DNA from: Octopus sinensis
Taxonomy: Eukaryota
Direction of reading: 5' to 3'
Length of the DNA: 64,000 nt
Assembly (NCBI RefSeq): GCF_006345805.1
Contig: NC_043000.1
Location: forward strand, 10,106,001-10,170,000
Part shown: positions 112-62,173 of the stretch, piece after piece
How the letters are laid out: each line of letters starts with the position of its first letter
Position numbering within the stretch: the first letter of the stretch is position 1
Notes under the pieces: model-generated
Told to the model about the DNA's origin: nothing
The model's input: only the letters and a program-made list of their open reading frames with translations
Databases searched by the model: none
Translations under genes and position numbers: made by a program

Positions 112-1255
112 GCGTCCGATGGTCAGGCGATCCATTTGCTGTCAACACCCGTTAAAAGGAGGGCTGGGCATGCCGTGGTTGATGATGCGCAGAACACGCG
201 CTGAGACTGCGACATCTCTGGCTCTATGTAGACGACGGTGAACAGTGTGTCGCCGTTTGTGAGGCACGCTTTCCCGCAGCTCGTCTCCATGACCGAACTG
301 CAGTCGTGGATCAAAAAGACCGAGGAAGGGCGAATGGCACCGCGAGTGTCGCGTTGCTCTCAAGCAACTCTGCCGTCCTGGGTCGACCTTAAGTGACTTC
401 AAACACAACCAAAGCATTCATAGGGGTTTAGTGGAGGGGAGGTACGACGACGAGCTCGGGGCGAACCTGGACGTCGACGAGGAGTACCTGACCCGCCTGT
501 TCGGGACGACTTTCGGGCCAGGCCCATGGACAACATTCCAGAGATCCCTGGCCTGGCAGTGCTACCGAGAAGCGCTACCCGTTCGGGATAAGCTCTACAG
601 ACACGGCTCGAGAAACCGGGGCCGACCTGCCCGAGATGCGGTCAGAGCGACGAAACCGTTCTGCACGCACTCGTTCAGTGTCCAACAATTTCCGACCTGT
701 GGGCTTATGTCGAACAACTGCTGTCACTGTGTTGGGACGAGTCGGTTTATCAGCTGAGTCTATCGTCAATATTGTCACGCCTCCTTCCTCAAACGGGAAG
801 GAAGAGCTATTTTCATCATCCTTGTGGCTATGGCGAAAGAAGTATCTGGTGGACGCGTCTGAAAGGATTGGAGACAAACACTTTCCTCTCTGGTCAATCT
901 CTCATCAACTTCTTCAAGTACCACTTGAAAGGAAAGTGAGAGTAGAGGGGCAAGTTTTGTCTAGCGAATGTTTTAAAAAAAAGATGGGTGAATGTAGCAA
1001 GAATGGCACGTTAGAAAGACGAAGCCACCTTGAGCATAGTCCTATGAACCAGAAATCGAAAACAGAGAGTTGCTTATTTGCAAAAAAAAAAAAAAAAAAA
1101 AAAAAGAAATATAAAATGTGACTTCATTGACCGAGGTTACCGTGGTCTTTTCCGTAGGCTTTTCTTTCCACGGTTAAACCTCACCGTCCTCCCCTTTTCA
1201 CTTCATATTGACATTCTGTGATAACGATCCCTATTGATCAATTTTTTTTTCCTCT

Positions 1256-1286
<31 letters not shown>

Positions 1287-1450
1287 CCCCCCCCCTTTTT
1301 TTTGTCCTCTTTCTCTCCTTTTACGATCCCTTTTGATCGAAACTCCCCTTTCCTTTTTTTTTTTTTTTTTTTTTTTTAAACCTTCAAAAGAAAAGCTCTA
1401 CCTTGTAATTTGTTCTATCTGTGTGCAGCCCTGTGTGGCTAATAAAGAAA
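112..1450 (+). mobile_element. 5'-truncated Tx1/L1-clade non-LTR retrotransposon (ORF2 C-terminus plus 3' UTR), frameshifted
   Basis: Translation across frameshifts gives PLKGGLGMPWL, RSLAWQCYREALPVRDKLYRHG and the CCHC finger PTCPRCGQSDETVLHALVQCP typical of L1/Tx1 ORF2 C-termini; 3' end gtggctaataaagaaa; flanked on both sides by acata(tcta)n. Confidence 0.85.
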
Positions 1451-1452
1451 CA

Positions 1453-3840: not shown

Positions 3841-4070
3841 GGCGGCGAGCTGGCAGAAACGTTAGCACGCCGGGCGAAATTCGTAGCTGTATTTCGTCTG
3901 TCGTTGCGTTCCGAGTTCAAATTCCGCCGAGGTCGACTTTGCCTTTCATCCTTTCGGGGTCGATAAATTAAGTACCAGTTACGCACTGGGATCGATGTAA
4001 TCGACTTAAATCCTTTGTCTGTCCTTGTTTGTCCCCTTGTGTTTAGCCCCTTGTGGGTAGTAGAAATATA
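3841..4070 (+). mobile_element. tRNA-derived SINE family M, long-tail type, monomer
   Basis: Head ggcggcgagctggcagaaacgttagcacg (A-box-like), B-box-like gagttcaaattcc, central gcctttcatcctttcggggtcgataaattaagtacc, tail ccttgtttgtccccttgtgtttagccccttgtgggtagtagaaata. Confidence 0.9.
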
Positions 4071-5372: not shown

Positions 5373-5380
5373 TTTTGAAT

Positions 5381-5435
<55 letters not shown>

Positions 5436-5564: not shown

Positions 5565-5656
<92 letters not shown>

Positions 5657-11335: not shown

Positions 11336-11398
11336 TCATTATGCTGGTCAGAGTGATTAAGGTAATGGTGCTGTTGCTGTCGTTGTTGTTGCTGTTAC

Positions 11399-11470
<72 letters not shown>

Positions 11471-11602
11471 CATCATCATTATTATTATTATTGTTGTTGT
11501 TGTTGTTGTTGTTGTTATTATTATTATTATTATTATTATTGAGTGAATGAGAGAGCAGTGCATGCCATCAAAGTGACACCGAGGTAAAATATACGAAGCC
11601 CA

Positions 11603-11683
<81 letters not shown>
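11399..11683. repeat. (ATT)n microsatellites enclosing a 60-bp minus-strand 3'-end fragment (11540-11602) of the (AAT)-tailed family
   Basis: Directly visible; the fragment matches 12530-12590 and 62640-62700. Confidence 0.85.
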
Positions 11684-11863
11684 TAAGGCGGTGAGCTGGC
11701 AGAATCGTTACCGCACTGGGCCAAACGCTTAGCGGCATTTCATCTGCCTTTACGTTCTGAGTTCAAATTTTGTCGTAGTCGACTTTGCTTTTCACCCTTC
11801 CTCGATCGATAAAACACTGGAGTTGACGTAATCGAGATTTACCCTCTTCCCGAACTTGCTGGT

Positions 11864-15705: not shown

Positions 15706-15954
15706 TTGAGAAACGTTTTTATGCTTGGATTTGCAAACTACGATAAGAATAACATATATGAAATGAACAATATGTAATATACCAACACAGAAAAAGTTAA
15801 GCAAAGCACGCGGGTGAAGAATCAAGTGTGTAAAATCAACACAGAACAACGAGCGTCACAGGCAGCAGTGAAGTGAACCACGAAGTCGCAGACAACAATG
15901 AAATGAACCACAACACAGCGTGAGGTTGCCATGATAACAAGCTTCTTATTTTTT

Positions 15955-16371
15955 TATTGTCCGTAAGGGGCTACACACAGAGGGGACAAACAAGGACAGA
16001 CAAACGGATTAAGTCGATTACATCGACCCAGTGCGTAACTGGTACTTATATAATCGATCCCGAAAGGATGAAAGGCAAAGTCGACCTCGGCGGAATTTGA
16101 ACACAGAACTTAGCGGCAGACGAAATACCTATCTCTTTAGTACCCACAAGGGTCTAAACACAGAGAGGACGAACAAGGACTGACAAACGGATTAAGTCGA
16201 TTATATCGACCCCAGTGCGGAACTGGTACTTATTTAATCGACCCCGAAAGAATAAAAGACAAAGTCGACCTCGGCGGAATTTGAACTCAGATCGTAGCGG
16301 CAGACGAAATACGGCTACGCATTTCGCCCAGCGTGCTAACGTTTCTGCCAGCTCGCCGTCTTCATGATAAC
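15955..16371 (-). mobile_element. SINE family M dimer (head plus two bodies)
   Basis: Junction aaagagata/ggtatttcgtc at 16130/16129. Confidence 0.9.
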
Positions 16372-17186: not shown

Positions 17187-17417
17187 GGCGGCGAGCTGGC
17201 AGAAACGTTAGCACGTCGGGGAGAAATGCTTAGCGGTATTTCATCTGTCGTTACGTTCTGAGTTCAAATTCCGCCGAGGTCGACTTTGCCTTTCATCCTT
17301 TCGGGATCGATAAATAAAGTACCAGTTACGCACTGGGGTCAATGTAATCGACTTAATCCGTTTGCCTGTCCTTGTTTGTCCCCGCTATGTTTAGCCCCTT
17401 GTGGGCAGTAAAGAAAT
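17187..17417 (+). mobile_element. SINE family M long-tail monomer with 13-bp TSD
   Basis: atatacggtgaaa at 17174-17186 and 17418-17430. Confidence 0.92.
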
Positions 17418-17494
17418 ATATACGGTGAAACATATATACACATACACACACGCACACACGCATATGTATCGTTTATCTTTTATTTGTTTCAGTC

Positions 17495-19192: not shown

Positions 19193-19230
19193 GTAAACAA
19201 ATAAAAAAATTATTGGAACATGTAGATACA

Positions 19231-19581
19231 ATGAGGGTACGTAACTATCTACGTCTGACACATAAGCAATGATGGCTATTCTCCTTGTGTTCAAACACTC
19301 AGGATATTTATCTTAGTTCTGCAAGTAACTATGATATTTCACTAAAGTAATCAAACAGAGACGTAGGCACAGCTGTGTGGTTAAGAAGCTTGCTTTGCAA
19401 TCACGTGAGTTCGGGTTCAGTCCCACTGCGCAGCACCTTGGCCGTGTATCTTCCTCTATAACTGCAAGCTAACCAATGCCTTGTGAGTTAATTTGATAGA
19501 CGGAAACTATGTGAAAGAAACTATAAGGCGGCGAACTGGCAGAATCGTTAGCACGTCGGGCGAAATGCCTAGCGGTTTTTC
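19231..19581 (+). repeat. 351-bp inverted duplication, copy 1 (partner 24407-24757)
   Basis: Reverse complement of 24407-24757 with only two mismatches seen; includes unique DNA, a family C SINE head and a truncated family M head. Confidence 0.92.
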
Positions 19582-19703
19582 ATAAATTCATAGATTTTCA
19601 GCTAATGTTCATCTTCGTGCTTCAATAAACGTACATACATATATATACGTAGATACATGCATACATACATACTTACGTACGTACGTTCATACATACATAC
19701 ATA

Positions 19704-21530: not shown

Positions 21531-24049
21531 TCTCCTAAGATTTGAACATGTACCCACAATCACATATGTGCATGCAGTATGCACACACATACATAAAATG
21601 TAATCACACAACAACAATTCTAACAAAATATAGTATGTACTCATGAAACGAACGCAAGTACATTCCCACATACACCCACAAATATGTACACATTAACTTG
21701 TACTCACATATTCACATATTCCACGAACTGTTTTATCTCAAACAAAGGACTTTCGTCAATTCGTTTATGGTTGGCTTGAATTCTGAAGACAGGAACTTAA
21801 GTATATCGCAAAATATTGGCAAAAAAAAATTGCGATGTCAAAGCGCAGACAAATCTTATAACTAAGAATGAAAACACTGACTTGGCAAAATTATGAGCCC
21901 ATTGTTTGTCTAAACATTATTTATATACTTTACAGAAGCTGTGTCAACCACTTTCTCATAAACCATTAAGCATCTACCAAAGTGGTGATCACTGAGTAGG
22001 CGAATAAAAAGAAAGTAGTTTGGGGATGTGCCAAATAACTTTTGATAAATAACCTTTGCTGTCAGAGACCTTTTACCCCAATAAATCACCACAGATACAA
22101 TAATCGGCATAAATGCAATTAACTTTTTAATATGAATAACGTAAAGGTCAGCTAGTCTTTCAGGATAAAAAGGCTTCTCAGTTCTAATTCTATAACTAAA
22201 GATATCCAACCAATCTTACAACTTCAGAAACTTTTCATTCTCCCCACGTAGTTCTGGGGTCGATGTGCTCGGCTAAAGACGGTGCTCCAGCATGACCACA
22301 GTCAAATGACTGAAACAAGTAAAAGAGTAAAGCAGCGTTATAGAGAACAGCTTTAATACCTCCTGATGGTATTGAGAATAATTGTACAATGTTCATCGCA
22401 AACACATCCAAAAGTCGAAACAATCAGTATTTACAGTTATTCAAATCGTGAGGCGAAGAGAGCTCCAATTCTTTCTTCTACTTTATTTCGAAAATAAACA
22501 ACTGTAGATCTTAACGCGTCCCAAGGATTAGAAACATCATGGGAAAAGTTATTGTGTATAACATCTGAGACATTCCAAAATAGTCAGTGATATTTTTAAA
22601 CAGAGCGTCCGAGGTACTGTACATCTGAAGTCTTCACAAGCAAATCCTTTTGAACGTTTGCCACCGTCCGACAGAGTTGTCAATCTATATAGGTATCAGA
22701 GACGACACATCATAATCATTGCAGAAAATCCTCTTCCCAGACACTCGCTTGTTAAATTTGAGTATATTTTCTCTACAGTACAGTAAGGCACCACTAACAG
22801 TAGCAACCTGATTTGCATGTCTGCAACAGGAACTACAACCTAACCACCGTTCTGGATGAATGAGTATCGGCATACTAGGGGTTTCGACATTTCCCAGTTC
22901 ATTACTCCATTTCATTACATTATTGCCTGAACAAGGACAAATAAGGTGACATTCCGAGTAGTAACGAAAGAATCATTAATGGGTTAATGTATTCTGAAAC
23001 ATACCCACACACATGTATGTATGTATGTATGTATGTATGTATGTATGTATGTATGTATGTATGTGTAAATATATGTATGTATGAATCCGTAAGTACGTAT
23101 GTATGTCAACTTCTGGAGGCATACATGCATAATAACTTAGCTGCCAATCATGACTGAAGCGTCTGTCAGCATTGGTATCGGGAATAATTCATAAAGAATT
23201 CATCATTCAAATGTTTCTTCCTGTAAGTGACAAATGAAGAATAAATCAGGATTTCTTTAGAATATTAATGAAAGACAAAGGACGACATATCGTAGATTCA
23301 GTAGAAAGCGGGATAAAAATGCCGTGCGATATTTAGCTACGTCTCTGTTTCTCGAGGTTCAAATGACGCCGGGGTCGACTTTAACCATTTCCCGTATGGC
23401 ATGGGGAGGTGTGTCAAGAAAATAGAGTACAAGTCAAGTACTGGGGTCGTGTAATAGGTTATGCTCATCCGACTAAATTTTGGGCTTTGTATTTTTGTCA
23501 GAAACCAATATTGATTTCGAATTTTGGCACAAGGCAGGAGTAAATCGATTATATCGAACCCAGTGAACAACAGGTACTTATTTCGTCAGATATCAATATT
23601 TATGAGAGATTTCAGGCAGCGAGTTGGCAGAATCGTTAGCACGCCGGGAAAAATGCTTGGCGGCATTTCGTCCATCTTTACGTTGTGAGTTCAAATTGTG
23701 TCGAGGTCGACGTTGCCTTTCGTCCTTTCAAGGTCGATAAAATAAGTACCAGTTCAGCAATAGGATCGATGTAATCAACTCACTCCCTTTCTCCGAAATT
23801 GCAGTCCTTGTGCCAAAAGTTGAAACCAATATTAAAAAAAATATTTATTTCTGGAAAGATACCAAAGTGATATCTTTTTTTTCAGTCATTTGACTGATGT
23901 CATGCTGGAGCATTGCCTTGATGGGTTCTAGTCGAACAAATCGACTCCAGTGCTTACGTTTTTTTTTAATAATTTTATAATTTTTGAGTGTGAAAATCAC
24001 AGACACTAGGACACACCCATACACAACGGCCTTCCACATAGTTTCCTAT

Positions 24050-24461
24050 TTCTTTATTGCCCACAAGAGGCTAAACATAGAGGGGACAAACAAGGACAGA
24101 CAAAGGGATTAAGTCGATTACACCGACCCCAATGCGTAACTCGTACTTAATTTATAGGTCCCGAAAGGATGAAAGGAAAAGTCGACCTCGGCGGAATTTG
24201 AACTCAGAACGTAACTACAGACAAAATACCAATTTCTTTACTACCCACAAGGGGCTAAACACAGAGGGGACAAACAAAGACAGACAAACGGATTAAGTCG
24301 ATTACATCGACCCCAGTGCGTAACTGGTACTTAATTTATCGACCCCGAAAGGATGAAAGGCAAAGTCGACCTCAGCGGAATTTGAACTCCGAACTTACCG
24401 GCAGACGAAAAACCGCTAGGCATTTCGCCCGACGTGCTAACGATTCTGCCAGTTCGCCGCC
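24050..24461 (-). mobile_element. SINE family M dimer nested in a family C SINE
   Basis: Junction taaagaaatt/ggtattttgtc at 24231/24230; the 3' unit ends gggcaataaagaaata. Confidence 0.9.
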
Positions 24462-24757
24462 TTATAGTTTCTTTCACATAGTTTCCGTCTATCAAATTAA
24501 CTCACAAGGCATTGGTTAGCTTGCAGTTATAGAGGAAGATACACGGCCAAGGTGCTGCGCAGTGGGACTGAACCCGAACTCACGTGATTGCAAAGCAAGC
24601 TTCTTAACCACACAGCTGTGCCTACGTCTCTGTTTGATTACTTTATTGAAATATCATAGTTACTTGCCGAACTAAGATAAATATCCTGAGTGTTTGAACA
24701 CAAGGAGAATAGCCATCATTGCTTATGTGTCAGACGTAGATAGTTACGTACCCTCAT
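24407..24757 (-). repeat. 351-bp inverted duplication, copy 2
   Basis: See 19231-19581. Confidence 0.92.
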
Positions 24758-25604
24758 GTCATCTCTCTCTCTTTCTCTCTCCCTCTCTTCTCTTTCTCTC
24801 CCCTCCTCTCTCTTCCCCCTCTCTCTCTCTCTCTCTCTATCTTGCTTTATATTTAACTAAGAGTAATAGACTGAATGTTCCGTTCAATTAGCAAGTGACA
24901 GCTTGACCATGTTTGAAATATCCGTCAAATGTCCTTCCAATCAAACCCTAGCACCTTAAGAGAAAATAATAAGTGGCTGAAACGCCATAGTCTTGCTTGT
25001 TCGGTACCCAGCTGGGAGTGAAAAGCAAGATCAGCAGAAGCGACAGGCTGCCTGTGTTGTCGCTCGTCGTGCTAGATATAGCAGTAGCATCTTACTCAAA
25101 TTACATTACATAGTACACACACACACTCCCTCACTCACACTCACTCCCCCACTCACACACACTCCCCTACTCACACACATGCCCCTCTCCCACTCACGCA
25201 CAATATATATTATGATAAAGACACAGACAAGACAACTTACATTTTCTAATTAACACATAAATGTACTTTATTAGTGACTTCTAAATTTGGCACATTGCCA
25301 TAATTTCGTACTACTCTTTGATTGCTGTATATCGGCTTCTCTCGGCAAGATTCAAATTAAAGGGGCGTAATAAAATATGTCTTCCGTTTCAGTCGCCCAA
25401 TATCTTAAAAATGTATATATTAGCACTGTTAGTAATTCTTCATGAAGTAAAAAAATTCATAGTTATGGGGTTGTGCAACATTATACTGTGACTGTTTACG
25501 AAGCTTTTTAATGTTGTAATAGAAGCCAACCAGGAAGAAATATATGAAACCAGTGGGGTTAGGTCCGATTTCATTCTGTTTCTCAATAATTTTTGTTTTT
25601 TTCA

Positions 25605-26065
25605 TATATTGAAAATAAGGCGGTGAGCTGCTAGAATCGTTAGCACGCCGAGCAGGATTAGCGGTATTTCGTCCGTTTTTCCGTTCTGTGTTCAAATTCC
25701 GCCGAGGTCGACCTTGCCTTTCATCCTTTCTGGGTCGACTAATTAAGTACCAGTGAAGCACCGAGGTCGATGTAATTGATTAGTCCCTTCCTCCAAAATT
25801 TCGGGTCTTGCCCCTTTAGTAGAAAGGATTCTATATTGAAAAATAAGGCGGTGAGCTGCAGAATCGTTAGCACGCCGGCCAAAATGCTTGGTGGCATTTC
25901 GTCCGATTTTTTTCCGTCCGGTGTTCAAGTTCCGCCAATGTCTCTTTTGCCTTTCATCCTTTCGGGGTCGATGAAATAAGTAGCTGTTGGCCAATGAGGT
26001 CAATGTAATCGATTAGCTATCTCCGCACAAAATTTTAGGTCTTGTGCCTATAGTAGAAAAGGTTT
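25605..26065 (+). mobile_element. Two tandem short-tail family M SINEs, each preceded by tatattgaaaata
   Basis: The same flank-plus-head sequence repeats at about 25605 and about 25833. Confidence 0.8.
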
Positions 26066-26089
26066 TTTATATATATATATATATATATA

Positions 26090-26659: not shown

Positions 26660-27245
26660 TTCGGACAGATCTAACAGAATAGTTAACACGCCAGACAAAA
26701 TGTTTAGTGGTATTTAGTCTGCTGCTACGTTCTGAGTTCAAATTCCGCCGAGGTCGACTTTGCCTTTCATCCTTTCGGGGTCGATTAAATAAGCACCAGT
26801 TACGCACTGGGGTCGAAGTAATCAACTTAATCTGTTTGTCTGTCCTTGTTTATCCCCTCTGTGTTTAGCCCCTTGTGGGTAGTAAAGAAATAGGTATTTC
26901 GGCTGCCGCGACGTTTTGAGTTCAAATTCTGCCAAGGTCGACTTTGCCTGTCATCATTTCGGGGTCGATTAAATAAGTACGAGTTACGCACTGGGGTCGA
27001 TATAATCGACTTAATCCGTTTGTCTGTCCTTGTTTGTCCTCTCTGTGTTTAGCCCCTTGTGGGTAGTAAAGAAATTGGTATTTCGTCCGGCTGCATGTCC
27101 TGAGTTCAAATTCAGCCGAGGTTGACTTCTGTTTTCATCTTTTCAGGTCGATAAAATCAGTACTATCTGAGCACTGAAGTTGATGTAATTCACTAGTCCT
27201 CTTCACACAAAAATCTCAGGCCTTGTTCCTATAAGTAAAAAGGAT
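26660..27245 (+). mobile_element. Family M composite: diverged head, two young long-tail units, diverged short-tail body
   Basis: Junctions gaaata/ggtatttc at 26892/26893 and gaaatt/ggtatttc at 27076/27077. Confidence 0.88.
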
Positions 27246-27621
27246 TTCAATTTAACGCAACAAAATTGTAGGAGTTAACAGCAAATTTTTAGTTGTGTGT
27301 TTCCCGTATGAATTTGAACCACACAGACTCGCGCATACATGATGTGCTTGAAAGTAAACAAAATTACTTCTATTTTCAATGAAATTTAATCTCCAAGGCA
27401 ATAGCTGTGTAAGCTAAAAAATAGTATTTTTATCACATTTACATGAAGGAAGTGCAAACTTTCCGTTAGTAAAATGCGATGCCAAATCTAAACGTTATCA
27501 GAATCACTGTGGAAGGAAGTTGGAAGAATGCTACATGAATAAAAACAAAATAATTATTACTGTTTAAGCAAGGTTACCTTGTCACTGGTGGTAGCAAAAG
27601 TGACATTCAAATCACTTTGTC

Positions 27622-27664
<43 letters not shown>

Positions 27665-28209
27665 GGCAGGTAGGAGTTGTTTCTTATCTTTGTGAATTTT
27701 TATCGTGTCTCGTTTTTGTACATTTCCCAATATTTATGTCATCTTTAAAAGAAGCTTCATGAAGAGAGAAAGAGATAAGCAACTCCGAAACTATTAAAGG
27801 GGAGAGATACAGTGTGTGTGTGTGTATGTGTGTGTGTGTGTGTGTGTGTATGAAAGAGAGAGAGAGAACAAGCGTAAATATATAGAGGATGTTTGAAATT
27901 AATGGGTGATATGAAACCTGATAGATGCAGTCAGAGATATACAGATATAACACGCACGCGTACAGATACATATACCTTTCTAGTATAGGCAGCTATTTTA
28001 CCGGCTTCGAAAGAATGAAAGGCAAATTCGAACTTGATGGTATTTGAACTCAGAACGTTAAGCCAGAAGAAAAGCTGCTAAGCATTTTTGTCCAGCGCGG
28101 TAGCGATTCTGCCAGCTCGCCGTCTGAAACACACGCGTATTATTTAGTTACATGGACAGAATGTTGACAGAGAAGTAAATGGTGAGAGACAAATAACAGC
28201 AAATCAAAA

Positions 28210-28242
<33 letters not shown>

Positions 28243-28243
<1 letters not shown>

Positions 28244-28450
28244 ATGGCCTAGTGGTTAGGGCAGCGGACTCGCGGTCGCAGGATCGCGGTTTCGATTCTC
28301 AGACCGGGCGTTGTGTGTGTTTATTGAGCGAAAACACCTAAAAGCTCTACGAGGCTCCGGCAGGGGGTGGTGATCCCTGCTGTACTCTTTCACCACAATG
28401 GCGGTGCCCCAGCATGGCCACAGCTCAAGAGCTGAAACTGGAAAAAAAAC
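28243..28450 (+). mobile_element. Third tRNA-derived SINE with CR1-type 3' stem-loop
   Basis: tggcctagtggttagg A box, ggtttcgattc B box; 3' ggtgccccagcatggccacagctcaagagctgaaact. Confidence 0.7.
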
Positions 28451-28467
28451 AAAAAAAAAAAACAAAA

Positions 28468-28499
<32 letters not shown>

Positions 28500-28579
28500 A
28501 AACACACACGCAGACATATAAATACACACATATACATATGTGTTTGCGTCTATATGTCTTTGTATTTGTATGTATATAC

Positions 28580-28623
<44 letters not shown>

Positions 28624-28624
28624 G

Positions 28625-28655
<31 letters not shown>

Positions 28656-28916
28656 GTGTGTGTATGGGTGTGTGTGTATGTGTGTGTACATGTACTGAAA
28701 TGTGTTTAAACAATAAAATGCTGAGGAATGTATATCGTTTTAAGTGATTCATCATGGGCCACACAATGTTATGTGAGAATATTTATAACAACAACCCAGT
28801 TACAGTTTTGAGGCTCCCGTCCCCTATTTCAACAAACTCACCTATATACCAACCAACCACCATCGACAAATATTGCATTACCCTTTAGATAACACAATAA
28901 AAGCTAGAGGGCTCAC

Positions 28917-29328
28917 TTGGAAGTGTTTGTATTTTTAGAATGGCATAATACTCGCAGTGTTTTTACGTGTTCTTGATGTTTGCTTGGAGGTGATTTTGTG
29001 TTGTGAAAGCGTTTGTGATTGTTGAAGTTAGTCGCAGCAACTAACTGTCCTTTCCATGCAAAGACTGGGAGAGAAATTTTGCAAGGAGGAATGACTCCCT
29101 TCGGGCTCCGGTGAGAGTGCCTCCTTTTGGTATTTGAAGGGTGCTGTGATATTTTTTGTTTTGATTTTGAGGTGGACTCATCAGATATTCGCGTGCCTCT
29201 TCTTTGGCTCTCAGAGTCCTGGAACAATGTACCGGTTGAACTCTGCTCTACTTTAGTAAACCCTGCTGACATGTCCAGTAGATGAGGCAGAGCAACTATT
29301 GCTCCCTGACAGAGTCCATCGCCCGAGG
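28917..29328 (-). CDS. Candidate coding exon, Ser/Lys/Thr/His-rich, product unknown
   Basis: Long polypyrimidine tract and gtttcAG acceptor; about 137 open codons; in-frame stop just upstream of the acceptor and inside the aa/GTGAG donor; GC higher than flanks. Confidence 0.45.
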
Positions 29329-29552
29329 CTGAAACTTAGACCGAGTTTGAAGAAGAGGAGAGAGAAGGAAACCAAGGGAATTTAATCAGTGAGTTATACC
29401 GTTAGCATCTTTAAATGAGAACTTACCCGCCTTAATCCCCTCTTGTTTCCTTTACAAATTTTCCAGTGTGCCCAAATCCCACATTTTGTCTTTATAAGTT
29501 TTTCTCTGTATTGTTCAGATTTGGAGGAGAGTATCTTGTTTTTGTTTTGCAA

Positions 29553-29980
29553 ATGGTGAGCTGGCAGAATCGTTAGCACGCCGGGCGAAATGCGTAGCAG
29601 TATTTCGCCTGTCGTTACGTTCTTAGTTCAAATTCCGCCGAGGTCGACTTTGCCTTTCATCCTTTCGGGGTCGATAAATTAAGTACCAGTTACACACTGG
29701 GGTCGATATAATCGAATTAATCCGTTTGTCTGTCCTTGTTTTCCCCCTCTGTGTTTAGCCCCTTGTGGGTAGTAAAGAAATAGGCATTTCTTTTGAATCT
29801 TTATATTCTGAGTTCAAATCTCATTGAGGTCAACTCCGTTTTTCATCTCTCCAAGGTCAGTGAAATAAAGTACCAGTCAAATGGGTACTTGACATATGAA
29901 GTACACGTACAAGTAAGTAGGTCGATAGTATCGATTATTCTCCTTCCCTCAGTATTGTTGGATTTGTACCTAAATTAGAA
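29553..29980 (+). mobile_element. Young long-tail family M SINE joined to an old short-tail body
   Basis: Junction gaaata/ggcatttc at 29782/29783. Confidence 0.82.
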
Positions 29981-31797
29981 ACCATTTATTTAGTCTATAG
30001 AATGCATGAAAACAAGACAGCAATCTTTATAATTATCCATACTTCCTTTTCTCCAGTATGTAATATCTACGATAAACACCCCCCCGCCCCCCCCACACAC
30101 ATACATGTACAGAATTCTTCAATTCTTATATTCAACTTTAGATTATTATTGAGCTGCATCCAAATTACTACTAAATAGTTTTCTCTCGAAACTTCCTCCG
30201 TTCACATCGTACAAGAGTCATTGAGGTTGCTAAATACCCAGGCCGGGAAGATTTTCTTCTGCTTCAAAACCCATCATTACACATCGTTTAGTGAGCATAA
30301 TTTCTATTTCTTACATTGGTTCCCATAATATATCCTACATCAACCGTTGCAAACGACGAACATTATCTATAAGAAATTCGGCAGTTTTTATGATACTCAA
30401 TTACTCTGCAAATACCGTACATCATTAGTTTGTTTTCATAGTTTTATCGTTCTTTCCCGTTTCCTTATGCTTTCATATTACTATGTTCCTATTTCTAACT
30501 TCTGTTTATCAAGACTATATTTTTCTTTCGTTTACTGTACCATATCTGTCTGCTCAAGATTTTCGACAAATTCCTGTTTTATTTACTCTTTATGTGTCAT
30601 TCCCCACTTATTCTCTTCTCCTCTTCATATAACTCTCTATCACCATCACTTTTTTACACTTTGTTCCATATTCCCTCCATTACTACTTATCTTCAGACAC
30701 CCATTCCCATACCATTTCATTCTCTCCTAGCTACCATCTTGTTACTTATCACATACCCGCCAAGCATTTGCTTTCCTTATCTTCTTCATCCAACATAATA
30801 GTCCTCAACATTTTTTTTCAATCATCGCCCTCTGGAAACTTTTTGCCAATTCTGTTTTCAGATCACTCTCTCCGCACAAAACAGTGAAATACTAAAACGA
30901 CATTTTTAACTCACTATTTTATTTAATGAGGTACTTGAAACCGATGTTTGTTACTAAATATGCAATTTTCGGTTTAATGTCGTTGAGTGTAAGAGATATC
31001 TCACCCCTTTTGTACACATCCAATTTGTCTCAACTAAATAGCATAATAGAAAACAGACAATTATTTCTGCAATTTCGGTCGACGACTTTAAATATAGTGT
31101 TTTATAGACTTTTAATGATCAATTTTGATGGATAATTCGAAAATAATTTTACTCCTTGTCTGAATAAAAATAAACCCACTTTCAGTGAAATATTCTCCTA
31201 ATTTCACCTCCAAAGAAGTTCATCCCCATCACAAGGGAAATAAAATAGTCTTATTAAGAAACCCTGTTGTAATACACTATATCATATATGCTTCTTCTCT
31301 ATTTTATATTTCGCTAAAGCTACTGATCTTCAGTTATTTATTTAAGCCTCGTCTTGTTATCTAATCCTTCTGCAGGTCATTCGTATCCCTACTCTGCCCC
31401 TTTACTGTTTTCTTTTTACGTTCTCTATATATTTTTTACTTCTACATCTAAGCTCCTTATTACAAGCTAATGAAGAAACCTCTATATGGTCGCTCGACTG
31501 GTTAAAAATAGTAGACGAATCTTCTTCAAACCATCTTAAAACATGTCATTTTGGATAACATAGTCTGCTGTACACTATTTATGTGTCACGATGTTCATGG
31601 GTTGACTGTCTTTGATCCATATTTACTTGACCAGAGCCGACTCGAGGCCCAACAACGTCAAGGATATCAACAATTTCTTAACTACAACCAGTTCCACTTG
31701 ACCATTTTAGTTAACAATCAACAAGTCTTCATATTCTAGGTTCTGATTAGTTAATTTTCACATAAATTGACTTTTAAGTTTCATAAATATCCCACAA

Positions 31798-32170
31798 AGC
31801 GGCGAACTAGCAAAACCGGTAGCGCGCCGGACAAAATGCTGAGCGGTATTTCGACTGCCGTTACGTTCGGTGTTCAAATTACGCCGAGGTTAACTTTACC
31901 TTTCATCCTTTCGGGGTCGATAAATTAAGTACCAGTTAAGCACTGGGGTCGATATAATCGACTTAATCCGTTTGTCTGTCCTTGTTTGTCCTCTCTGTGT
32001 TTAGCCCCTTGTGGGTAGTAAAGAAATAGGTATTTCCTCTCACTCTTTTCATATTGAGGTAGACTTTTCCTTTTTATCTCTTCTGGTCGATAACATGTGT
32101 ACTTGTAGAGTACCAGGTTCGATGTAATTGACTGGTCCCCTCTTCCAAAATTCTAGGCCTTGTATTTATA
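31798..32170 (+). mobile_element. Family M composite: diverged head, one young unit, diverged short-tail body
   Basis: Junction gaaata/ggtatttcc at 32028/32029. Confidence 0.85.
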
Positions 32171-32925
32171 AGTAGAAAGAATTCTCACAAATAGTCCACC
32201 TATATTGGTTTCAAATTTTAGGACAAGGCCAACAATTTCTGGGGAGGTGGTAAGTCGACTACATCGTCCCGCAGTTCTCAACTGGTACTTATTTTATCGA
32301 CCCCGAAAGGATGAAAGGCAAAATCGATCCCGGTGGGATTTGAACTCAGAACGTAAAATCAGAAGAAATGCCGCTAAACATTTTGTTCGAAGCGGTATCA
32401 ATTCTGCCAGCTCACCGTCTTAAATTCTGCCTTTATTAAAACAAAAAATTATGACAATTTTGGTATGTCATACTTTCTCATCTGTTATGTTAGATGGGGG
32501 TACCTTATCAAATCTACCGAATTTCTGTTGTAACTGAGATGTCATTGACACTTGGCACACGATATGATGCCCTTAAACCAGCATAATTTTCATTGCAATG
32601 AACAATAGTATCACAATTATAAACATACATAAAAGAAATAGAAATATCAACTCTCATTATAACATTGCTCTCGTGCCTATGACTCTCTCCTCATTTGGCG
32701 TCACACATCAATAGCATTAATGACTTCAGAGATAGTCTTCCCGATAAAATAAAAAATTATTTAAGATAAAATATATAAACATAGGCAAGGCTTCGTGTTT
32801 AAGAAGCTTGCTTTGTAACCACGAGGTTTCGGGTTCAGTCCCACTGCGCAGTACTTTGGGCAGAAGTCTTCTTCTCTAGCCTCGGGCTGACGACTGCCTT
32901 GTGAGTGAATTTGGTTAATATATAT

Positions 32926-45233: not shown

Positions 45234-45462
45234 GCGGCGAGCTGGCAGAATCGTTAGCGCGCCGGGCGAAATGCGTAGCCGTATTTCGTCTGCCGTTACG
45301 TTCTGGGTTCAAATTCCGCCGAGGTCCACTTTGCCTTTCATCCTTTCGGGGTCGATAAATTAAGTACCAGTTACACACTGGGGTCGATGTAATCGACTTA
45401 ATCCGTTTGTCTGTCCTTGTTTGTCCTCTCTGTGTTTAGCCCCTTGTGGGTAGTAAAGAAAT
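45234..45462 (+). mobile_element. SINE family M long-tail monomer with 14-bp TSD
   Basis: atacaactgttcag at 45220-45233 and 45463-45476. Confidence 0.93.
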
Positions 45463-46030
45463 ATACAACTGTTCAGCGCATAAATCTATATAGAACAATT
45501 CTATGATACAACCCTCATTTCGCTCGTTGATGACGATACGAAGATCTGTGTCCCTTGCAGCTGGCAAAGTTAATGATTATATTGATATTCCATATCTGTA
45601 TTCCCACACATTGTGCACGCGTGTATTTACATTTATATTAGATAACACTATTGTGTAATTTAATATTGTATTATTGTGCACACATATATTTACATCGATA
45701 TTACATTATTATTGTGGCTCTGCGTCATTAATCGAGCACTTTGTGATGATATAACATAAATATATATCTAAAGGTATAATGAAAAGTTCTCTTAATCGAA
45801 TGATTTCAGATATTTTTCCTACCTCATTTTATTCTCTTCTTGTCTATCCGTTTTTCTAGAAGAAAAGTGAATAAAAGATATTTCCACCTTTTAATTCTTT
45901 TTCACTTCCTGAGCGTCAGCCCTAGCACACTCTGTGTTTGCTTTTAAACCTCCTCTTCAGGTTGTATTATTTTTTTGCACTATATATGTATGTATATATA
46001 TATATATATAATATATATATATATATTATA

Positions 46031-50843: not shown

Positions 50844-52346
50844 GGCGGCGAGCTGGCAGAAACGTTAGCACGCCGGGCGAAATGCTAAGCGGTATTTCGT
50901 CTGCCGTTACGTTCTGAGTTCAAATTCCGCCGAGGTCGACTTTGCCTTTCATCCTTTCGGGGTCGATAAATTAAGTACCAGTTACGCACTGGGTTGATAT
51001 AATCGACTTAATCCGTTTGTCTGTCCTTGTTTGTCCCCTCTGTGTTTAGCCCCTTGTGGCTAGTAAAGAAATAGTATTTCGTCTGCCGTTACGTTCTGAG
51101 TTCAAATTCCGCCGAGGTCGACTTTGCCTTTCATCCTTTCGGGGTCGATAAATTAAGTACCAGTTACGCACTGGGTTGATACAATCGACTTAATCGTTTG
51201 TCTGTCCTTGTTTGTCCCCTCTGTGTTAGCCCCTTGTGGCTAGTAAAGAAATAGTATTTCGTCTGCCGTACGTTCTGAGTTCAAATTCCGCCGAGGTCGA
51301 CTTTGCCTTTCATCCTTTCGGGGTCGATAAATTAAGTACCAGTTACGCACTGGTTGATATAATCGACTTAATCCGTTTGTCTGTCCTTGTTTGTCCCCTC
51401 TGTGTTTAGCCCCTTGTGGCTAGTAAAGAAATAGTATTTCGTCTGCCGTTACGTTCTGAGTTCAAATTCCGCCGAGGTCGACTTTGCCTTTCATCCTTTC
51501 GGGGTCGATAAATTAAGTATCAGTTACGCACTGGGTTGATACAATCGACTTAATCCGTTTGTCTGTCCTTGTTTGTCCCCTCTGTGTTTAGCCCCTTGTG
51601 GCTAGTAAAGAAATAGTATTTCGTCTGCCGTTACGTTCTGAGTTCAAATTCCGCCGAGGTCGACTTTGCCTTTCATCCTTTCGGGGTCGATAAATTAAGT
51701 ACCAGTTACGCACTGGGTTGATATAATCGACTTAATCCGTTTGTCTGTCCTTGTTTGTCCCCTCTGTGTTTAGCCCCTTGTGGCTAGTAAAGAAATAGTA
51801 TTTCGTCTGCCGTTACGTTCTGAGTTCAAATTCCGCCGAGGTCGACTTTGCCTTTCATCCTTTCGGGGTCGATAAATTAAGTACCAGTTACGCACTGGGT
51901 TGATATAATCGACTTAATCCGTTTGTCTGTCCTTGTTTGTCCCCTCTGTGTTTAGCCCCTTGTGGCTAGTAAAGAAATAGTATTTCGTCTGCCGTTACGT
52001 TCTGAGTTCAAATTCCGCCGAGGTCGACTTTGCCTTTCATCCTTTCGGGGTCGATAAATTAAGTACCAGTTACGCACTTGGTTGATATAATCGACTTAAT
52101 CCGTTTGTCTGTCCTTGTTTGTCCCCTCTGTGTTTAGCTCCTTGTGGCTAGTAAAGAAATAGGTATTTCGTCTGCCGTTACGTTCTGAGTTCAAATTCCG
52201 CCGAGGTCGACTTTGTCTTTCATCCTTTCGGGATCGATAAATTAAGTACCAGTTACACCCTGGGGTCGATGTAATCGACTTAATCCGTTTGTCTGTCCTT
52301 GTTTGTCCCCTCTGTGATTATTGCCCTTGTGGGCAATAAAGAAATA
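50844..52346 (+). mobile_element. Family M SINE: one head followed by eight tandem 180-183-bp units, inside a single TSD pair
   Basis: Unit starts at 50892, 51074, 51254, 51434, 51616, 51798, 51980, 52163; TSD agaattat(a/t)ccattt at 50828-50842 and 52347-52361. Confidence 0.95.
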
Positions 52347-60216: not shown

Positions 60217-60724
60217 ATATGCGTACATTTATATATGCATGTTTGTAAGTGTGTTTGTGTATATGTATGTATATATGTTTTAAGAGAACAAGTTGAGAAA
60301 GAGAATAATATAATCAAAAGTGAATGAAAAATAAAAATGAGGAATGATTACAGAATATATGAAGGTTATGGAAACTCTCAACCTCTCAATTCCATTGAAA
60401 GTGGAACTAAATATTTTCACATCGATGACCTTTGTAACCTATAGTCAGTATTGCAATTACGGTGATTGTTATGATAGTGGTAGTAGCAGTGAGAAGCATT
60501 AATTGTGGTGGTTTCGAGTCTGTGAATAAGAGAAATTATTTCTTTGTCAATTGTATCTTTGTCACATCCCATCGGAATTTGAACTCCGAACATTAACTGA
60601 ACGGAAATATATGGTGTATGACATTCAGTTCTAACTCGTCACTGTTTCTTTCACACCACACTTCGTTTATCATACTACGATTATTATAGTAGGTAATAGT
60701 GATAACTTATTATCACTATTACCT

Positions 60725-61133
60725 ACGAACTGGCAGAAATGTTAGCGCGCCGGTCGAAATGCGTAGCCTTATTTCGTCTGACGTTACGTTCTGAGTTCAA
60801 ATTCCGCCGAGGTCGACTTTGCCTTTCATCCTTTCGGGGTCGATAAATTAAGAACAAGTTACACACTGGGGTTGATATAATCGACTCAATTCGTTTGTCT
60901 GTCCTTGTTTGTCTCCTCTGTGTTTATTCCCTTGTGGGTAGTAAAGAAATAGGTATTTCGCCTACCGCTACGTTTTGAGTTCAAATTCCGCCGAGGTCAA
61001 CTTTGCCTTTCACCTTTTCGGGGTCGATTAAATAAGTACCAGTTACGCACTGGGGTCGATATAATCGACTTAATCCGTTTGTCTCTCCTTGTTTGTCTCC
61101 TCTGTGTTTATTCCCTTGTGAGTAGTAAAGAAA
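60725..61133 (+). mobile_element. Family M SINE dimer
   Basis: Junction gaaata/ggtatttcg at 60951/60952; TSD taggtaatagt. Confidence 0.9.
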
Positions 61134-62173
61134 TAGGTAATAGTAATTATACTGGTCGTGCTTCAGTTTCGGTTTATTAATTGTCCAATAAGGTACTGGT
61201 AGTGTGTATAAACCCATTACTGAGATGGAGTTGTCGCATAATATGGAAATATGACTGGCCAGGGAAATAAACATGTTGGTATAACAATGGTACTACTAAC
61301 AGCTGATGATGAGGTCATCGACACCAGAGAACCAAAAGAAGATAATAAAATAAAAGCATTAAGAAGAGTGTAAGAGTTAAAGATTATCGGTCTGTGTTTA
61401 ACAACGAAGATGACTAATCGATTACTTCGGAATATTTTATCTGGTTTTCTACATGTCAAATCTGTGTAATGGCACTCAATGCATTGAAAGGTAAAGAAAG
61501 CATTATCCCAGGGAAGAGAAAAGTAGAAATAAATACCAAAGTTAATAGATTTAAAGAGAGTCAAGACTATTGAAAAGGTTGTATGACGCAACGAAAATTT
61601 TAGGAAAATAAAAATAAGAAATAAGTGGAAATTTTACCGGTGAGTGTGTTACATTATAAGGCAGAAAAAGAAAATGACTCTCCCCAGACACAACAGAATA
61701 TGCTTCAACACACGAACTCATATAAAGTATCTTGCAAACCAAATCCAAAAACGAATGATTTAAAGAACTTTTGTCTGAAAATAAACTGAGCTTAGCAGCA
61801 TTTCGTTCGTCTTTACGTTCCGAGTTCAAATTCCGCCAAGGTTGACTTTGCCTTTCATCCTTTCGGGGATCGATGAAATAAATACCAGTCAAGTACTGCA
61901 GTCGATGCAATCAACCAACCCCTTGCTTCTAAAGCTACTGGTCTTGTGCCCAAAATTTTAAACAGTTCTTGGCACTATTTTATCCACGTTTTCAAGATCC
62001 ACAAGTGAGAAACATTGTCACAAACTTTCTAGTTGTCAAACCATGCTATACTCAGATCATCCTCTTTTTCCTCCATCCATAGCATTGTTGATCAATAATT
62101 GACCTTTGCAGTCATGAGAATCATTGCACCATCTCTTCTGAAATAAGTCAGTACATCTTGATGTTTATCATTT

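What the first reader, a model, noticed from the sequence alone, without database searches (positions are those of the whole stretch)
26660..32170. A SINE that appears to insert into its own family at one fixed internal site
Seen: seven loci have the long-tail family M 3' end (gaaata or gaaatt) joined to the same internal position of another family M copy, gg(t/c)attt. The junctions are at 16129, 24230, 26893 and 27077, 29783, 32029, 60952 and throughout 50844-52346. The site lies in the loop of the head hairpin gcgaaatgc-ttagc-ggtatttcgt, between the A and B boxes. At 26660-27245 and 31798-32170 a diverged old head and a diverged old short-tail body are split by one or two near-consensus young units, so the young unit entered an old host. 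In dimers the 3'-most unit is usually the older gggcaataaag variant. Inference: site-biased target-primed reverse transcription into the SINE itself, with the 5' junction resolved by annealing to the homologous target, would add exactly one ~182-bp unit per event and build head+(unit)n arrays. Established parallel: Xenopus Tx1L inserts site-specifically into another mobile element, and many Tx1-clade endonucleases are sequence-specific. I do not know of this being described for a SINE.
Basis: partly seen in the sequence, partly recalled or inferred. Interest (0 to 1): 0.82.

Follow-up and report, generated by a model that had tools for sequence, protein, structure and literature searches.

The report
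SINE nesting at one hairpin site
In this octopus-type genome a short mobile element (SINE) sits again and again at one exact nucleotide inside older copies of its own superfamily, most likely by targeted insertion that adds a headless 184-bp unit each time and seeds small tandem arrays; human Alu has a comparable self-insertion hot spot, so this is a new variant of a known behaviour.

Summary
The long-tail SINE ('M') 3' end (…AAAGAAAT[A/T]) is joined to the same internal position (|GG[T/C]ATTT) at 8 junctions in 7 loci, against 0.09 expected by chance. Six more junctions in the octamer lack one G. The site X is the boundary between the UAGC loop and the 3' arm of a 13-bp hairpin in the SINE head.

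Three loci (26660-27246, 29555-29989, 31798-32183) are true age mosaics. M units are 4-7% diverged and sit beside short-tail bodies that are 18-28% diverged. In two loci the heads are also old (19-25%) and of short-tail type. The young-to-old switch lies within 3-12 nt of X in all three. This excludes a single dimeric master, template-jump chimeras and variable gene-conversion tracts for these loci, and supports repeated insertion at X.

The M-M dimers cannot be told apart from copies of a dimeric master. The octamer grew by local tandem amplification, not by repeated insertion. The M tail matches the 3' end of an L1/Tx1-like LINE (zf-RVT), but no LINE copy seen sits at X, so the basis of the specificity is unknown.

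Precedents exist: the Alu self-insertion hot spot, and SINEU-3 with Tx1-Mar. All evidence for X comes from one 64-kb window.

The parts
26660..26708 (+). Old short-tail-type (S) head of the host SINE. It carries the S-diagnostic GGACAAAATG and ends at site X.
   Evidence: 12 differences in 48 (25%) against 6-7% for the adjacent M units, p=2e-4.
26709..26892 (+). Young family M unit 1 (184 bp, headless), ending GTAGTAAAGAAATA.
   Evidence: 6.0% diverged from the M consensus.
26893..27076 (+). Young family M unit 2, ending ...GAAATT. Its start is the tail|X junction at 26892/26893.
   Evidence: 7.1% diverged. It differs from unit 1 at 18 sites, so it is not a recent local copy.
27077..27246 (+). 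Old S1-type body of the host, starting exactly at X (GGTATTTCGTCCG...) and ending ...TATAAGTAAAAAGGATT.
   Evidence: 18% diverged from the S1 consensus, p=1e-4 against the M units. S-type bases begin at +12.
29555..29782 (+). Near-complete young M monomer (its own M-type head plus one unit).
   Evidence: 96% identical to the M consensus. Head has 2 differences in 44, unit is 4.3% diverged.
29783..29989 (+). Old headless S2-type body starting at X (GGCATTTC...), with a 33-bp internal insertion.
   Evidence: 27.5% diverged, p=5e-11 against head plus unit. No old head within 1.1 kb upstream.
31798..31844 (+). Old S-type head of the host (GGACAAAATG).
   Evidence: 9 differences in 47 (19%) against 4.9% for the unit, p=0.003.
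31845..32028 (+). Young M unit.
   Evidence: 4.9% diverged. M-diagnostic TGCC appears by +12.
32029..32183 (+). Old S1-type body starting at X, with the B-box region deleted.
   Evidence: 23% diverged, p=8e-7. Body-to-body divergence from the 27077 body is 24%, against 10-11% between the M units of the two loci.
15947..16357 (-). M-M dimer (head, unit, unit). The 3' unit is the GGGCAATAAAG-type variant. Junction at 16129/16130.
   Evidence: A 17-bp TSD with 1 mismatch flanks the whole dimer. Units are 8.2% and 8.7% diverged.
24047..24458 (-). M-M dimer. Junction reads GAAATT|GGTATTT at about 24230. The 3' unit is the GGGCAATAAAG variant.
   Evidence: A TSD of about 16 bp flanks the whole dimer. 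Units are 4.3% and 8.7% diverged.
50847..52346 (+). Head plus 8 units. Units 1-7 are near-identical. Unit 8 is the GGGCAATAAAG variant.
   Evidence: TRF period 182, 8.0 copies, 97% matches. Shared private variants and the G-less junction. A 15-bp TSD flanks the whole array.
60724..61135 (+). M-M dimer, junction at 60951/60952. The two units share private tail variants (GTCTCC, TTTATTCCC) but differ elsewhere.
3844..4068 (+). M monomer (control, X unoccupied).
17190..17418 (+). M monomer with an intermediate GGGCAGTAAAG tail and a perfect 12-bp TSD (control).
45236..45463 (+). M monomer, 13-bp TSD (control).
112..1452 (+). 5'-truncated L1/Tx1-like LINE 3' part. Its end (...CTGTGTGCAGCCCTGTGTGGCTAATAAAGAAACA) resembles the M tail. 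It is a relative of the probable partner LINE.
   Evidence: Tail match of 79% over 42 bp. zf-RVT match at E=1.3e-4, below Pfam's cut-off. Relatives in O. sinensis and Argonauta end in the same tail.

Best explanation
Family M is a non-autonomous retroposon whose 3' tail is copied from an L1/Tx1-like LINE.

Proposed mechanism: a large share of its insertions, about half in this window, are started by a nick at one nucleotide, X (…UAGC|GG[U/C]AUUUC…). X is the loop/3'-arm boundary of the conserved head hairpin in resident SINEs of the same superfamily (M, S1, S2), always in the sense orientation. Reverse transcription starts on the M tail, which gives the fixed tail|X junction. Because the new cDNA is homologous to the target, the upstream end of the target can pair with it and prime second-strand synthesis. 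The host then keeps its head and gains exactly one headless 184-bp unit. When this fails, a full M copy is joined non-homologously and the host head is lost, as at 29555. Once two units lie side by side, unequal exchange can expand them, as in the octamer.

Shown:
- the fixed junction;
- young M sequence bounded at X by old host sequence at three independent loci;
- the LINE origin of the tail;
- local amplification of the octamer.

Inferred:
- that the nick is made by a LINE endonuclease;
- what makes X about 100-fold preferred over other sites with the same short motif;
- the annealing step;
- that the M-M dimers arose in the same way.
For: 1. Eight junctions match the pattern against 0.09 expected. 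All are in the same orientation and all carry an intact M tail.
2. Age mosaics:
- 26660 locus: head 25% and body 18% diverged, units 6-7% (p=2e-4 and 1e-4).
- 31798 locus: head 19% and body 23%, unit 4.9% (p=0.003 and 8e-7).
- 29555 locus: body 27.5%, head plus unit 4% (p=5e-11).
- Control: heads of six other M loci do not evolve faster than their units (p=0.23).
3. The hosts differ (two S1, one S2). The two S1 hosts differ from each other by 24-33%, while their M units differ by 10-11%. There is therefore no common composite master.
4. The young-to-old switch lies 3-12 nt 3' of X in 3 of 3 loci. The old-to-young switch lies between -8 and +11 of X in 2 of 2 loci.
5. Only M tails are joined to X: 8 of 15 M 3' ends, against 0 of about 14 short-tail 3' ends.
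6. No solitary headless unit starts at X among about 27 SINE loci.
7. The base after the junction is G in 8 of 8 cases, although only about half of the SINE copies in the window have G there.
8. Four of seven free M target sites start RGWW (AGAA, AGAA, GGAA, GGTA), like X (GGTA) and like the O. sinensis LINE site (GGAT).
9. LINE copies with a zf-RVT domain in the window, in O. sinensis and in Argonauta end in the M-type tail.
10. Precedents: the Alu self-insertion hot spot in sense orientation (PMC2836564), and target-specific SINEU-3 with sequential tandem insertions mobilised by Tx1-Mar (PMC4494074).
Against: - All evidence for X comes from one 64-kb window, with three decisive loci.
- The three related LINE copies seen are not at X. 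They lie in (TATC)n, in a 31-bp minisatellite and next to (ATT)n.
- Free M target sites resemble X only in a 4-nt start. Other RGWW sites inside the SINE are never used. A further determinant of roughly 100-fold is unexplained.
- M-M dimers show no old/young asymmetry: 8.2% against 8.7%, and 6.5% against 7.6%.
- In 15947 and 60724 the head loop (GCGTAGC|C) pairs with unit 1. They look like an intact monomer followed by a headless unit.
- At 29555 the host head is missing, which needs an extra deletion.
- No duplication longer than 8-11 nt is visible at X, although free M insertions have 12-17-bp TSDs.
Confidence: 0.6

Rival explanations
1. Dimeric or multimeric master. The tail|X junction arose once or a few times in a source gene (head, Ma unit, Mb unit). 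Multimers then spread by ordinary retrotransposition of the whole transcript, as with Alu. Arrays change length afterwards by unequal exchange.
For: - TSDs flank whole dimers and the octamer.
- Three of four M-M multimers have the same order, with the GGGTAGTAAAG-type unit upstream and the LINE-like GGGCAATAAAG-type unit at the 3' end.
- The units of a dimer are equally diverged.
- The consensus unit has no T4 run, so Pol III could read through.
- For B2, Dip and Ves multimers the literature itself leaves this question open (PMC8466645).
Against: - It cannot produce old head / young unit / old short-tail body mosaics with three different hosts.
- The dimers share no dimer-specific variants. 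Their unit-1 sequences belong to different subfamilies (GATTAAATAAG against GATAAATTAAG), and the unit tree is star-like.
- It may still hold for some or all M-M dimers.
Confidence: 0.15
2. Template jumping. SINE RNAs are cut at the loop (C|G), or the reverse transcriptase stops there. On reaching that 5' end the enzyme jumps to the 3' end of another M RNA. One insertion event then yields head+(unit)n.
For: - X lies in a single-stranded tetraloop at a CpG step of a tRNA-like hairpin.
- End-to-end template jumping is established for non-LTR reverse transcriptases (background knowledge) and is invoked for SINE module exchange (PMC4758252).
- Dimers at 15947 and 60724 look like a complete monomer followed by a headless unit.
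Against: - It makes an insertion of one age, but the bodies and heads of the composites are 3-5 times more diverged than the M units. One body lacks its B box.
- It predicts many solitary headless units starting at X. None is seen.
- It predicts other acceptor RNAs, but only M tails occur at X (0 of 14 short tails).
Confidence: 0.08
3. Fragile hairpin plus cDNA capture. The 30-bp quasi-palindrome breaks at its loop. The break is repaired using M cDNA, which pairs with the head and is end-joined to the body. No endonuclease specificity is needed.
For: - It gives the same product as the best explanation.
- A recent 359-bp inverted duplication has a breakpoint 8 nt past X.
- LINE copies are not at X.
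Against: - The M tail is intact at every junction, and only M, never S, is captured.
- The first base after the junction is always G.
- The junction is to the nucleotide, which is unlike break repair.
Confidence: 0.1
4. Ectopic gene conversion or unequal recombination with multimeric M donors copies a unit plus junction into old short-tail SINEs.
For: - The dimer 60724-61135 is itself a mosaic. Its units share private tail variants but differ elsewhere, so exchange between units does happen.
- Subfamily markers tend to agree within a locus.
Against: - Tract ends should vary, yet the 3' switch is within 3-12 nt of X in 3 of 3 loci and the 5' switch within -8 to +11 in 2 of 2.
- The hosts are only 72-82% identical to the donor.
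- It does not explain where the first junction came from.
Confidence: 0.05

Closest known systems
Alu self-insertion hot spot (Levy et al. 2010, PMC2836564)
   Same: A SINE inserts into copies of its own family at a single prominent internal position, in the sense orientation. [quoted passage not shown]
   Different: The Alu site adjoins an A-rich stretch and is explained by L1 poly(A) priming. Here the site is the loop boundary of a GC-containing hairpin, with no A-run and no visible microhomology to the tail. The product is a headless unit added in register, which builds head+(unit)n.
SINEU-3 / Tx1-Mar in crocodilians (Kojima 2015, PMC4494074)
   Same: A SINE mobilised by a Tx1-type LINE inserts almost exclusively at one site of another mobile element. 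Tandem copies arise by sequential insertion at the regenerated target.
   Different: That target is an unrelated Mariner transposon, and the partner LINEs were shown to share the same target. Here the target is the SINE's own superfamily, and the partner LINE's target is not shown to be X.
Tx1L into Tx1D (Xenopus), and Keno, Kibi and Koshi (as summarised in PMC4494074)
   Same: L1/Tx1-superfamily elements with endonuclease-determined sequence-specific targets, including repeated genes, other transposons and microsatellites. The LINE copies found here lie in tandem repeats.
   Different: Clade membership of the octopod LINE has not been tested by RT phylogeny. No LINE copy was found at X.
Head-to-tail SINE multimers (B2 40%, Dip 49%, Ves 11.5% of copies; PMC8466645)
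   Same: A large fraction of copies sit in tandem multimers of up to eight units. It is an open question whether they arise by insertion into a resident copy or from multimeric templates.
   Different: Those multimers are made of full-length SINEs joined at A-rich tails. Here the repeated unit lacks the head and is joined at an internal site.
SINE-derived satellites in squamates (PMC10702118)
   Same: Tandem arrays are built from part of a SINE with primordial SINE sequence at the ends, and they are homogenised locally. The octamer fits this description.
   Different: In squamates the unit phases differ among taxa and are ascribed to unequal recombination. Here the phase is fixed by a recurrent junction at independent loci.
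Dimeric SINEs amplified from dimeric masters (Alu; Bov-A2, from background knowledge)
   Same: Repeated modules within one transcribed element. The 3'-most module carries the tail most like the LINE's.
   Different: The composites with unrelated old hosts show that the junction forms repeatedly, not once.

Membership tests
Target-site-specific LINE-mobilised retroposon (Tx1L/Tx1D or SINEU-3/Tx1-Mar type) | Independent insertions at the same nucleotide of a repeated target, in one orientation. | tested here: met
   Eight junctions against 0.09 expected, all in sense orientation. Three have hosts of different family and age.
Target-site-specific LINE-mobilised retroposon (Tx1L/Tx1D or SINEU-3/Tx1-Mar type) | The SINE shares its 3' tail with a LINE. 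| tested here: met
   The window LINE end matches the tail at 79% over 42 bp. The O. sinensis LINE end matches at 86% over 43 bp. The Argonauta LINE ends ...CCCTTGTGGCTAATAAAAGAAATA.
Target-site-specific LINE-mobilised retroposon (Tx1L/Tx1D or SINEU-3/Tx1-Mar type) | The partner LINE shows the same target preference. | tested here: not met
   None of the three related LINE copies seen is at X. Their 3' flanks are (TATC)n, a 31-bp minisatellite (GGATGTTC...) and (ATT)n. They come from different families and species, so the true partner may not have been sampled.
Target-site-specific LINE-mobilised retroposon (Tx1L/Tx1D or SINEU-3/Tx1-Mar type) | Nearly all copies lie in the target. | tested here: not met
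   Seven of about 15 inferred M insertion events are at unrelated sites with ordinary 12-17-bp TSDs. This is a strong bias, not strict specificity.
Tx1 clade of the L1 superfamily | Placement of the reverse transcriptase and APE endonuclease within Tx1 by phylogeny. | not tested
   Only the C-terminal zf-RVT region is present (PF13966, E=1.3e-4, below the curated cut-off). Homologues carry PF13966. A repeat annotation of O. vulgaris lists L1-Tx1 as the only L1-type LINE class (PMC13282606).
SINE amplified from a dimeric or multimeric master | All segments of a copy have the same age. | tested here: not met
   Not met for the three composites (p from 0.003 to 5e-11). Compatible for the three M-M dimers.
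SINE amplified from a dimeric or multimeric master | Position-specific diagnostic variants are shared by copies at different loci. | tested here: inconclusive
   The 3' unit is the GGGCAATAAAG type in 3 of 4 multimers. However, the unit-1 sequences belong to different subfamilies, and there is no junction-specific shared variant.
SINE-derived tandem repeat (sSat-like) | A locally homogenised array of partial SINE units flanked by primordial SINE parts. | tested here: met
   In the octamer 50847-52346, units 1-7 differ by about 1 position from each other and share three private variants. Units 2 and 4 share a further variant.
tRNA-derived SINE with a conserved central domain | The head is recognisable as a tRNA. 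| tested here: not met
   ARAGORN finds no tRNA in the window. Rfam gives no tRNA hit on a monomer at E<=10. A-box-like and B-box-like motifs and an anticodon-like hairpin are seen only by eye and by folding.
tRNA-derived SINE with a conserved central domain | The central domain is shared with SINEs of distant animals. | tested here: met
   More than 120 JGI metagenome contigs from another host share only consensus positions 91-135.

The most novel reading that the evidence does not exclude
The retrotransposition machinery that moves family M recognises the tRNA-anticodon-like hairpin of resident SINEs, by sequence plus structure, as a preferred landing site. The SINE superfamily thus serves as its own safe harbour. 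Each hit adds one promoter-less unit in register, giving a regular, insertion-driven route from a dispersed SINE to satellite-like arrays.
Probability: 0.3. Interest if true: 0.75.

Novelty: new variant of a known kind. Interest (0 to 1): 0.52.

Why it matters
If confirmed genome-wide, this would matter in four ways.
- It would show that a SINE occupying several percent of an octopus genome directs about half of its insertions into its own relatives. That lowers its cost to the host and may help explain how octopus genomes tolerate SINE loads above 10%.
- It would give a concrete, phase-fixed mechanism for turning dispersed SINEs into tandem arrays. The literature on SINE-derived satellites leaves that link open.
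- It would add a non-A-rich, hairpin-associated target to the known list of LINE target preferences.
- In practice, repeat annotators would miscount and misdate these composites unless head, unit and body are treated separately.

Tried and rejected
Attempts to obtain more copies of the family all failed.
- A protein search with the SINE's open antisense frame gave one 543-bp ENA contig holding a monomer.
- A 31-mer scan of JGI metagenomes gave 0 hits.
- A 25-mer scan of viral contigs gave 0 hits.
- A 21-mer scan gave more than 120 contigs, but these share only the 45-bp central domain and belong to another host.
- A CR1-like RT query returned no same-species genome.
- The Argonauta locus has no M copies.
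- The one O. sinensis locus has no M copy, only the LINE tail.

No genome-wide or orthologous-locus test was therefore possible.

Other points considered and rejected:
- An old head upstream of 29555: the alignment score is at chance level, while positive controls score 26-30.
- A common composite master for 26660 and 31798: heads and bodies differ two to three times more than the units do.
- Microhomology between the M tail and the primer strand at X: none. The tail GAAATA is complementary to TATTTC on the same strand, which would give the opposite orientation.
- Recombination at the shared GAAAT of the tail and the 5' arm: the product would retain the loop, and that is not observed.
- A tRNA call for the head by ARAGORN or Rfam: negative.
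- The octopus genome papers I read do not mention SINE multimers.

Full report
WHAT IS THERE

The window is AT-rich eukaryotic DNA full of microsatellites and SINEs of octopod type. Its LINE fragments find their best relatives in Argonauta hians and Octopus sinensis.

blastn of head plus unit against the window gives ten long-tail loci:
- three monomers (3844, 17190, 45236);
- three dimers (15947-, 24047-, 60724);
- one octamer (50847);
- three composites (26660, 29555, 31798), in which one or two M units are followed by the body of a short-tail relative.

The short-tail relatives fall into two tail types. S1 ends …GGCCTTGTGCCTATAGTAGAAAGGATT. S2 ends …GCCAAAATTTGAAACCAATATT. About 15 such copies are present. 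ARAGORN finds no tRNA, and Rfam gives no tRNA match on a monomer. The tRNA origin therefore rests on box-like motifs and on the hairpin.

Shuffles give 0.09 expected. Six further junctions inside the octamer read ATA|GTATTT.

Folding the head gives a 13-bp stem with a UAGC loop. The junction site X is the phosphodiester bond between the last loop base and the first base of the 3' arm. Positions 43 and 48 co-vary: T…G in the short-tail families and some M copies, G…C in GCGTAGCC heads. This suggests the hairpin is maintained.

TSDs of 12-17 bp flank the monomers, the whole dimers and the whole octamer.

THE DECISIVE LOCI

I measured divergence for each segment against the best family consensus and tested the differences with Fisher's exact test.
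- 26660 locus: head 12/48 differences, units 11/184 and 13/184, body 31/172. p=2e-4 for the head and 1e-4 for the body.
- 31798 locus: head 9/47, unit 9/184, body 37/159. p=0.003 and 8e-7.
- 29555 locus: head plus unit 10/228, body 49/178. p=5e-11.

Heads do not evolve faster in general. In six other M loci the heads have 19/289 differences and the units 52/1103 (p=0.23).

Both old heads carry the short-tail diagnostic GGACAAAATG instead of the M-type GGGCGAAATG. Two bodies are S1 and one is S2. The two S1 hosts differ from each other by 33% in the heads and 24% in the bodies. Their M units differ by only 10-11%. They are therefore not copies of one composite master.

The switch from young M sequence to old host sequence comes 3, 9 and 12 nt after X in the three loci. 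The switch from old head to M-type sequence lies between -8 and +11 of X in the two loci that keep an old head.

At 29555 the M copy has its own head, and no old head exists within 1.1 kb upstream. The alignment score there is at the level of shuffles, whereas the positive controls score 26 and 30.

WHAT THIS EXCLUDES

- A single dimeric master cannot give old/young/old mosaics with three different hosts.
- A template-jump chimera is of one age. It would need RNA from badly decayed copies, one of which lacks its B box.
- Template jumping also predicts many solitary headless units beginning at X. None is seen among about 27 SINE loci.
- Template jumping predicts a mixture of acceptor RNAs. Yet M tails are joined to X at 8 of 15 M 3' ends, and short tails at 0 of about 14.
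- Gene conversion from multimeric donors should leave tract ends scattered over the 160 bp of shared sequence, not at X.

What remains is insertion of M at X of a resident SINE. The base after the junction is G in 8 of 8 cases, although only about half of the SINE copies have G there; the others have A, C or T. This points to recognition of sequence rather than random breakage of the loop.

HOW THE EXACT UNIT ARISES (INFERENCE)

In target-primed reverse transcription the bottom strand is nicked at X and the cDNA starts on the M tail. Once the cDNA passes X it is complementary to the end of the host's own head. The upstream top-strand end can then pair with it and prime second-strand synthesis. 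This keeps the old head up to the top-strand cut and copies everything downstream from the young cDNA. It explains why both boundaries lie at X and why exactly one unit is added.

I found no microhomology between the primer strand (…CGAAATACC-3') and the tail. The free insertions likewise show little microhomology.

WHAT IS NOT SUPPORTED

The octamer is not a series of insertions. Units 1-7 differ from one another by about one position. They share three private variants (GGGTTGAT with one G lost and C>T, plus GGCTAG) and the G-less junction. Units 2 and 4 share a further variant, GATACAATCG. This is stepwise local amplification of one unit next to an older GGGCAATAAAG-type unit.

The M-M dimers are undecided.
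- Their units are equally diverged, 8.2% against 8.7% and 6.5% against 7.6%. Only 24047 differs, at 4.3% against 8.7%.
- Units within a dimer are not each other's nearest relatives, and the unit tree is star-like.
- Three of four multimers have the GGGCAATAAAG variant at the 3' end.
- In 15947 and 60724 the head loop is of the type that pairs with unit 1 (GCGTAGC|C), so these look like a whole monomer followed by a headless unit.

Insertion with a crossover further upstream in the head would explain these dimers. So would a dimeric master or a template jump.

THE PARTNER LINE

- The only other M-like tail in the window (1409-1450) is the end of a 5'-truncated LINE at 112-1452. Its last ORF has a CPRC…H…C motif and a weak zf-RVT match (E=1.3e-4, below Pfam's cut-off). 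It lies between two (TATC)n arrays.
- Its protein relatives all carry zf-RVT.
- The O. sinensis copy (LOC118766888) ends …GTCCCCCTCTATGTTTGGGCCCTTGTGGCTAATAAAGAAATT|GGATGTTC. This is 86% identical to the M tail over 43 bp. It sits inside a 31-bp minisatellite.
- The Argonauta copy ends …CCCTTGTGGCTAATAAAAGAAATA followed by (ATT)4.

The M tail therefore comes from an L1/Tx1-like LINE lineage that is conserved across octopods, and all three copies seen lie in or beside tandem repeats. None is at X. Four of seven free M target sites begin RGWW, as do X and the O. sinensis LINE site. That motif is far too common to explain X. It also occurs at several other places inside the SINE that are never used. 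The extra preference of about 100-fold is unexplained. Candidates are a longer recognition sequence, the hairpin itself, or breakage at the palindrome.

COMPARISON WITH WHAT IS KNOWN

The behaviour has precedents.
- Alu self-insertions in the human genome use one prominent internal hot spot in the sense orientation (PMC2836564).
- SINEU-3 of crocodilians inserts almost only into one Mariner family, together with its Tx1-Mar partners, and forms tandem copies by sequential insertion (PMC4494074).
- Up to half of B2 and Dip copies lie in head-to-tail multimers of unresolved origin (PMC8466645).
- Squamates have SINE-derived satellites (PMC10702118).

What is different here:
- the target is a hairpin loop boundary, not an A-rich stretch;
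- the target is the element's own superfamily;
- homology turns each hit into an in-register, headless unit.

I found no mention of this in the octopus genome papers I read, and I could not examine any further octopus sequence.

VERDICT

Recurrent, site-biased insertion at X is the best explanation for the three composites. It is the most economical explanation for the dimers. It is wrong for the bulk of the octamer. Confidence is 0.6, because everything rests on one window. I class this as a new variant of a known kind, of moderate interest.

Noticed in passing
window 19225-19582 and 24408-24765: A 359-bp inverted duplication at 98.9% identity. It copies the 5' flank, TSD and head of the dimer at 24047-24458 and stops at GGTTTTTC, 8 nt past site X, where this copy has a T5 run. 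It could reflect breakage near the hairpin, a retro-copy ending at a Pol III terminator, or an assembly artefact.
   Followed up: partly
window 63-111, 112-1452, 1453-1527: The 5'-truncated L1/Tx1-like LINE fragment is bracketed by (TATC)n on both sides. This suggests insertion into, or generation of, that microsatellite. All eight TATC-type arrays in the window read TATC on the + strand and none reads GATA.
   Followed up: partly
window 60692-60723: At the 5' junction of the dimer 60724-61135, the target GGTAATAGTGATAA is followed by its own inverted copy TTATCACTATTACC. The SINE is also about 7 nt short at its 5' end. This is an inverted-duplication scar at the 5' junction.
   Followed up: no
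window 24459-24498 (-): At the 5' junction of the dimer 24047-24458, eight extra bases (AAACTATA) lie between the TSD (GGAAACTATGTGAAAG) and the SINE start. They repeat part of the TSD.
   Followed up: no
loci L004-L123 (JGI metagenome contigs): More than 120 contigs from host-associated metagenomes contain CATCCTTTCGGGGTCGATAAA but match only consensus positions 91-135 of family M. The 45-bp central domain is thus shared with a repeat of some other animal, which makes it a conserved SINE core domain.
   Followed up: partly
window 25605-26066: Two S1-type SINEs lie in tandem (TRF period 233, 78% matches). Each is preceded by TATATTGAAAA(A)TAAGGC. Either one inserted 12-13 bp upstream of the other, or SINE plus TSD underwent an old tandem duplication.
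   Followed up: no
window 5135-5692, 11395-11860, 62394-62641: S2/S1-type SINEs adjoin long (ATT)n/(TTA)n arrays at their ends. The short tails …AATATT appear to seed or target these microsatellites.
   Followed up: no
locus L124 7236-9600 and 11071-19141 (Octopus sinensis CM016876.1): A long 31-bp minisatellite (AGATGTTCCAYCACAGTTGCCACCAGTCTCC…) gives open reading frames of up to 381 aa. The LINE LOC118766888 is inserted within it.
   Followed up: partly
window 6207-7153 (-): This is the C-terminal part of a CR1/jockey-like reverse transcriptase, broken by a stop and a frameshift. An old short-tail SINE lies immediately downstream of it. The best relatives are at 55-62% identity in Argonauta and ENA metagenome contigs.
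   Followed up: partly
window 28244-28465: A different tRNA-like SINE (GGCCTAGTGGTTAGGGCAGCGGACTCGCGGTCGCAGGATCGCGGTTTCGATTC…) with an A-rich tail, set between TA/TG microsatellites.
   Followed up: no
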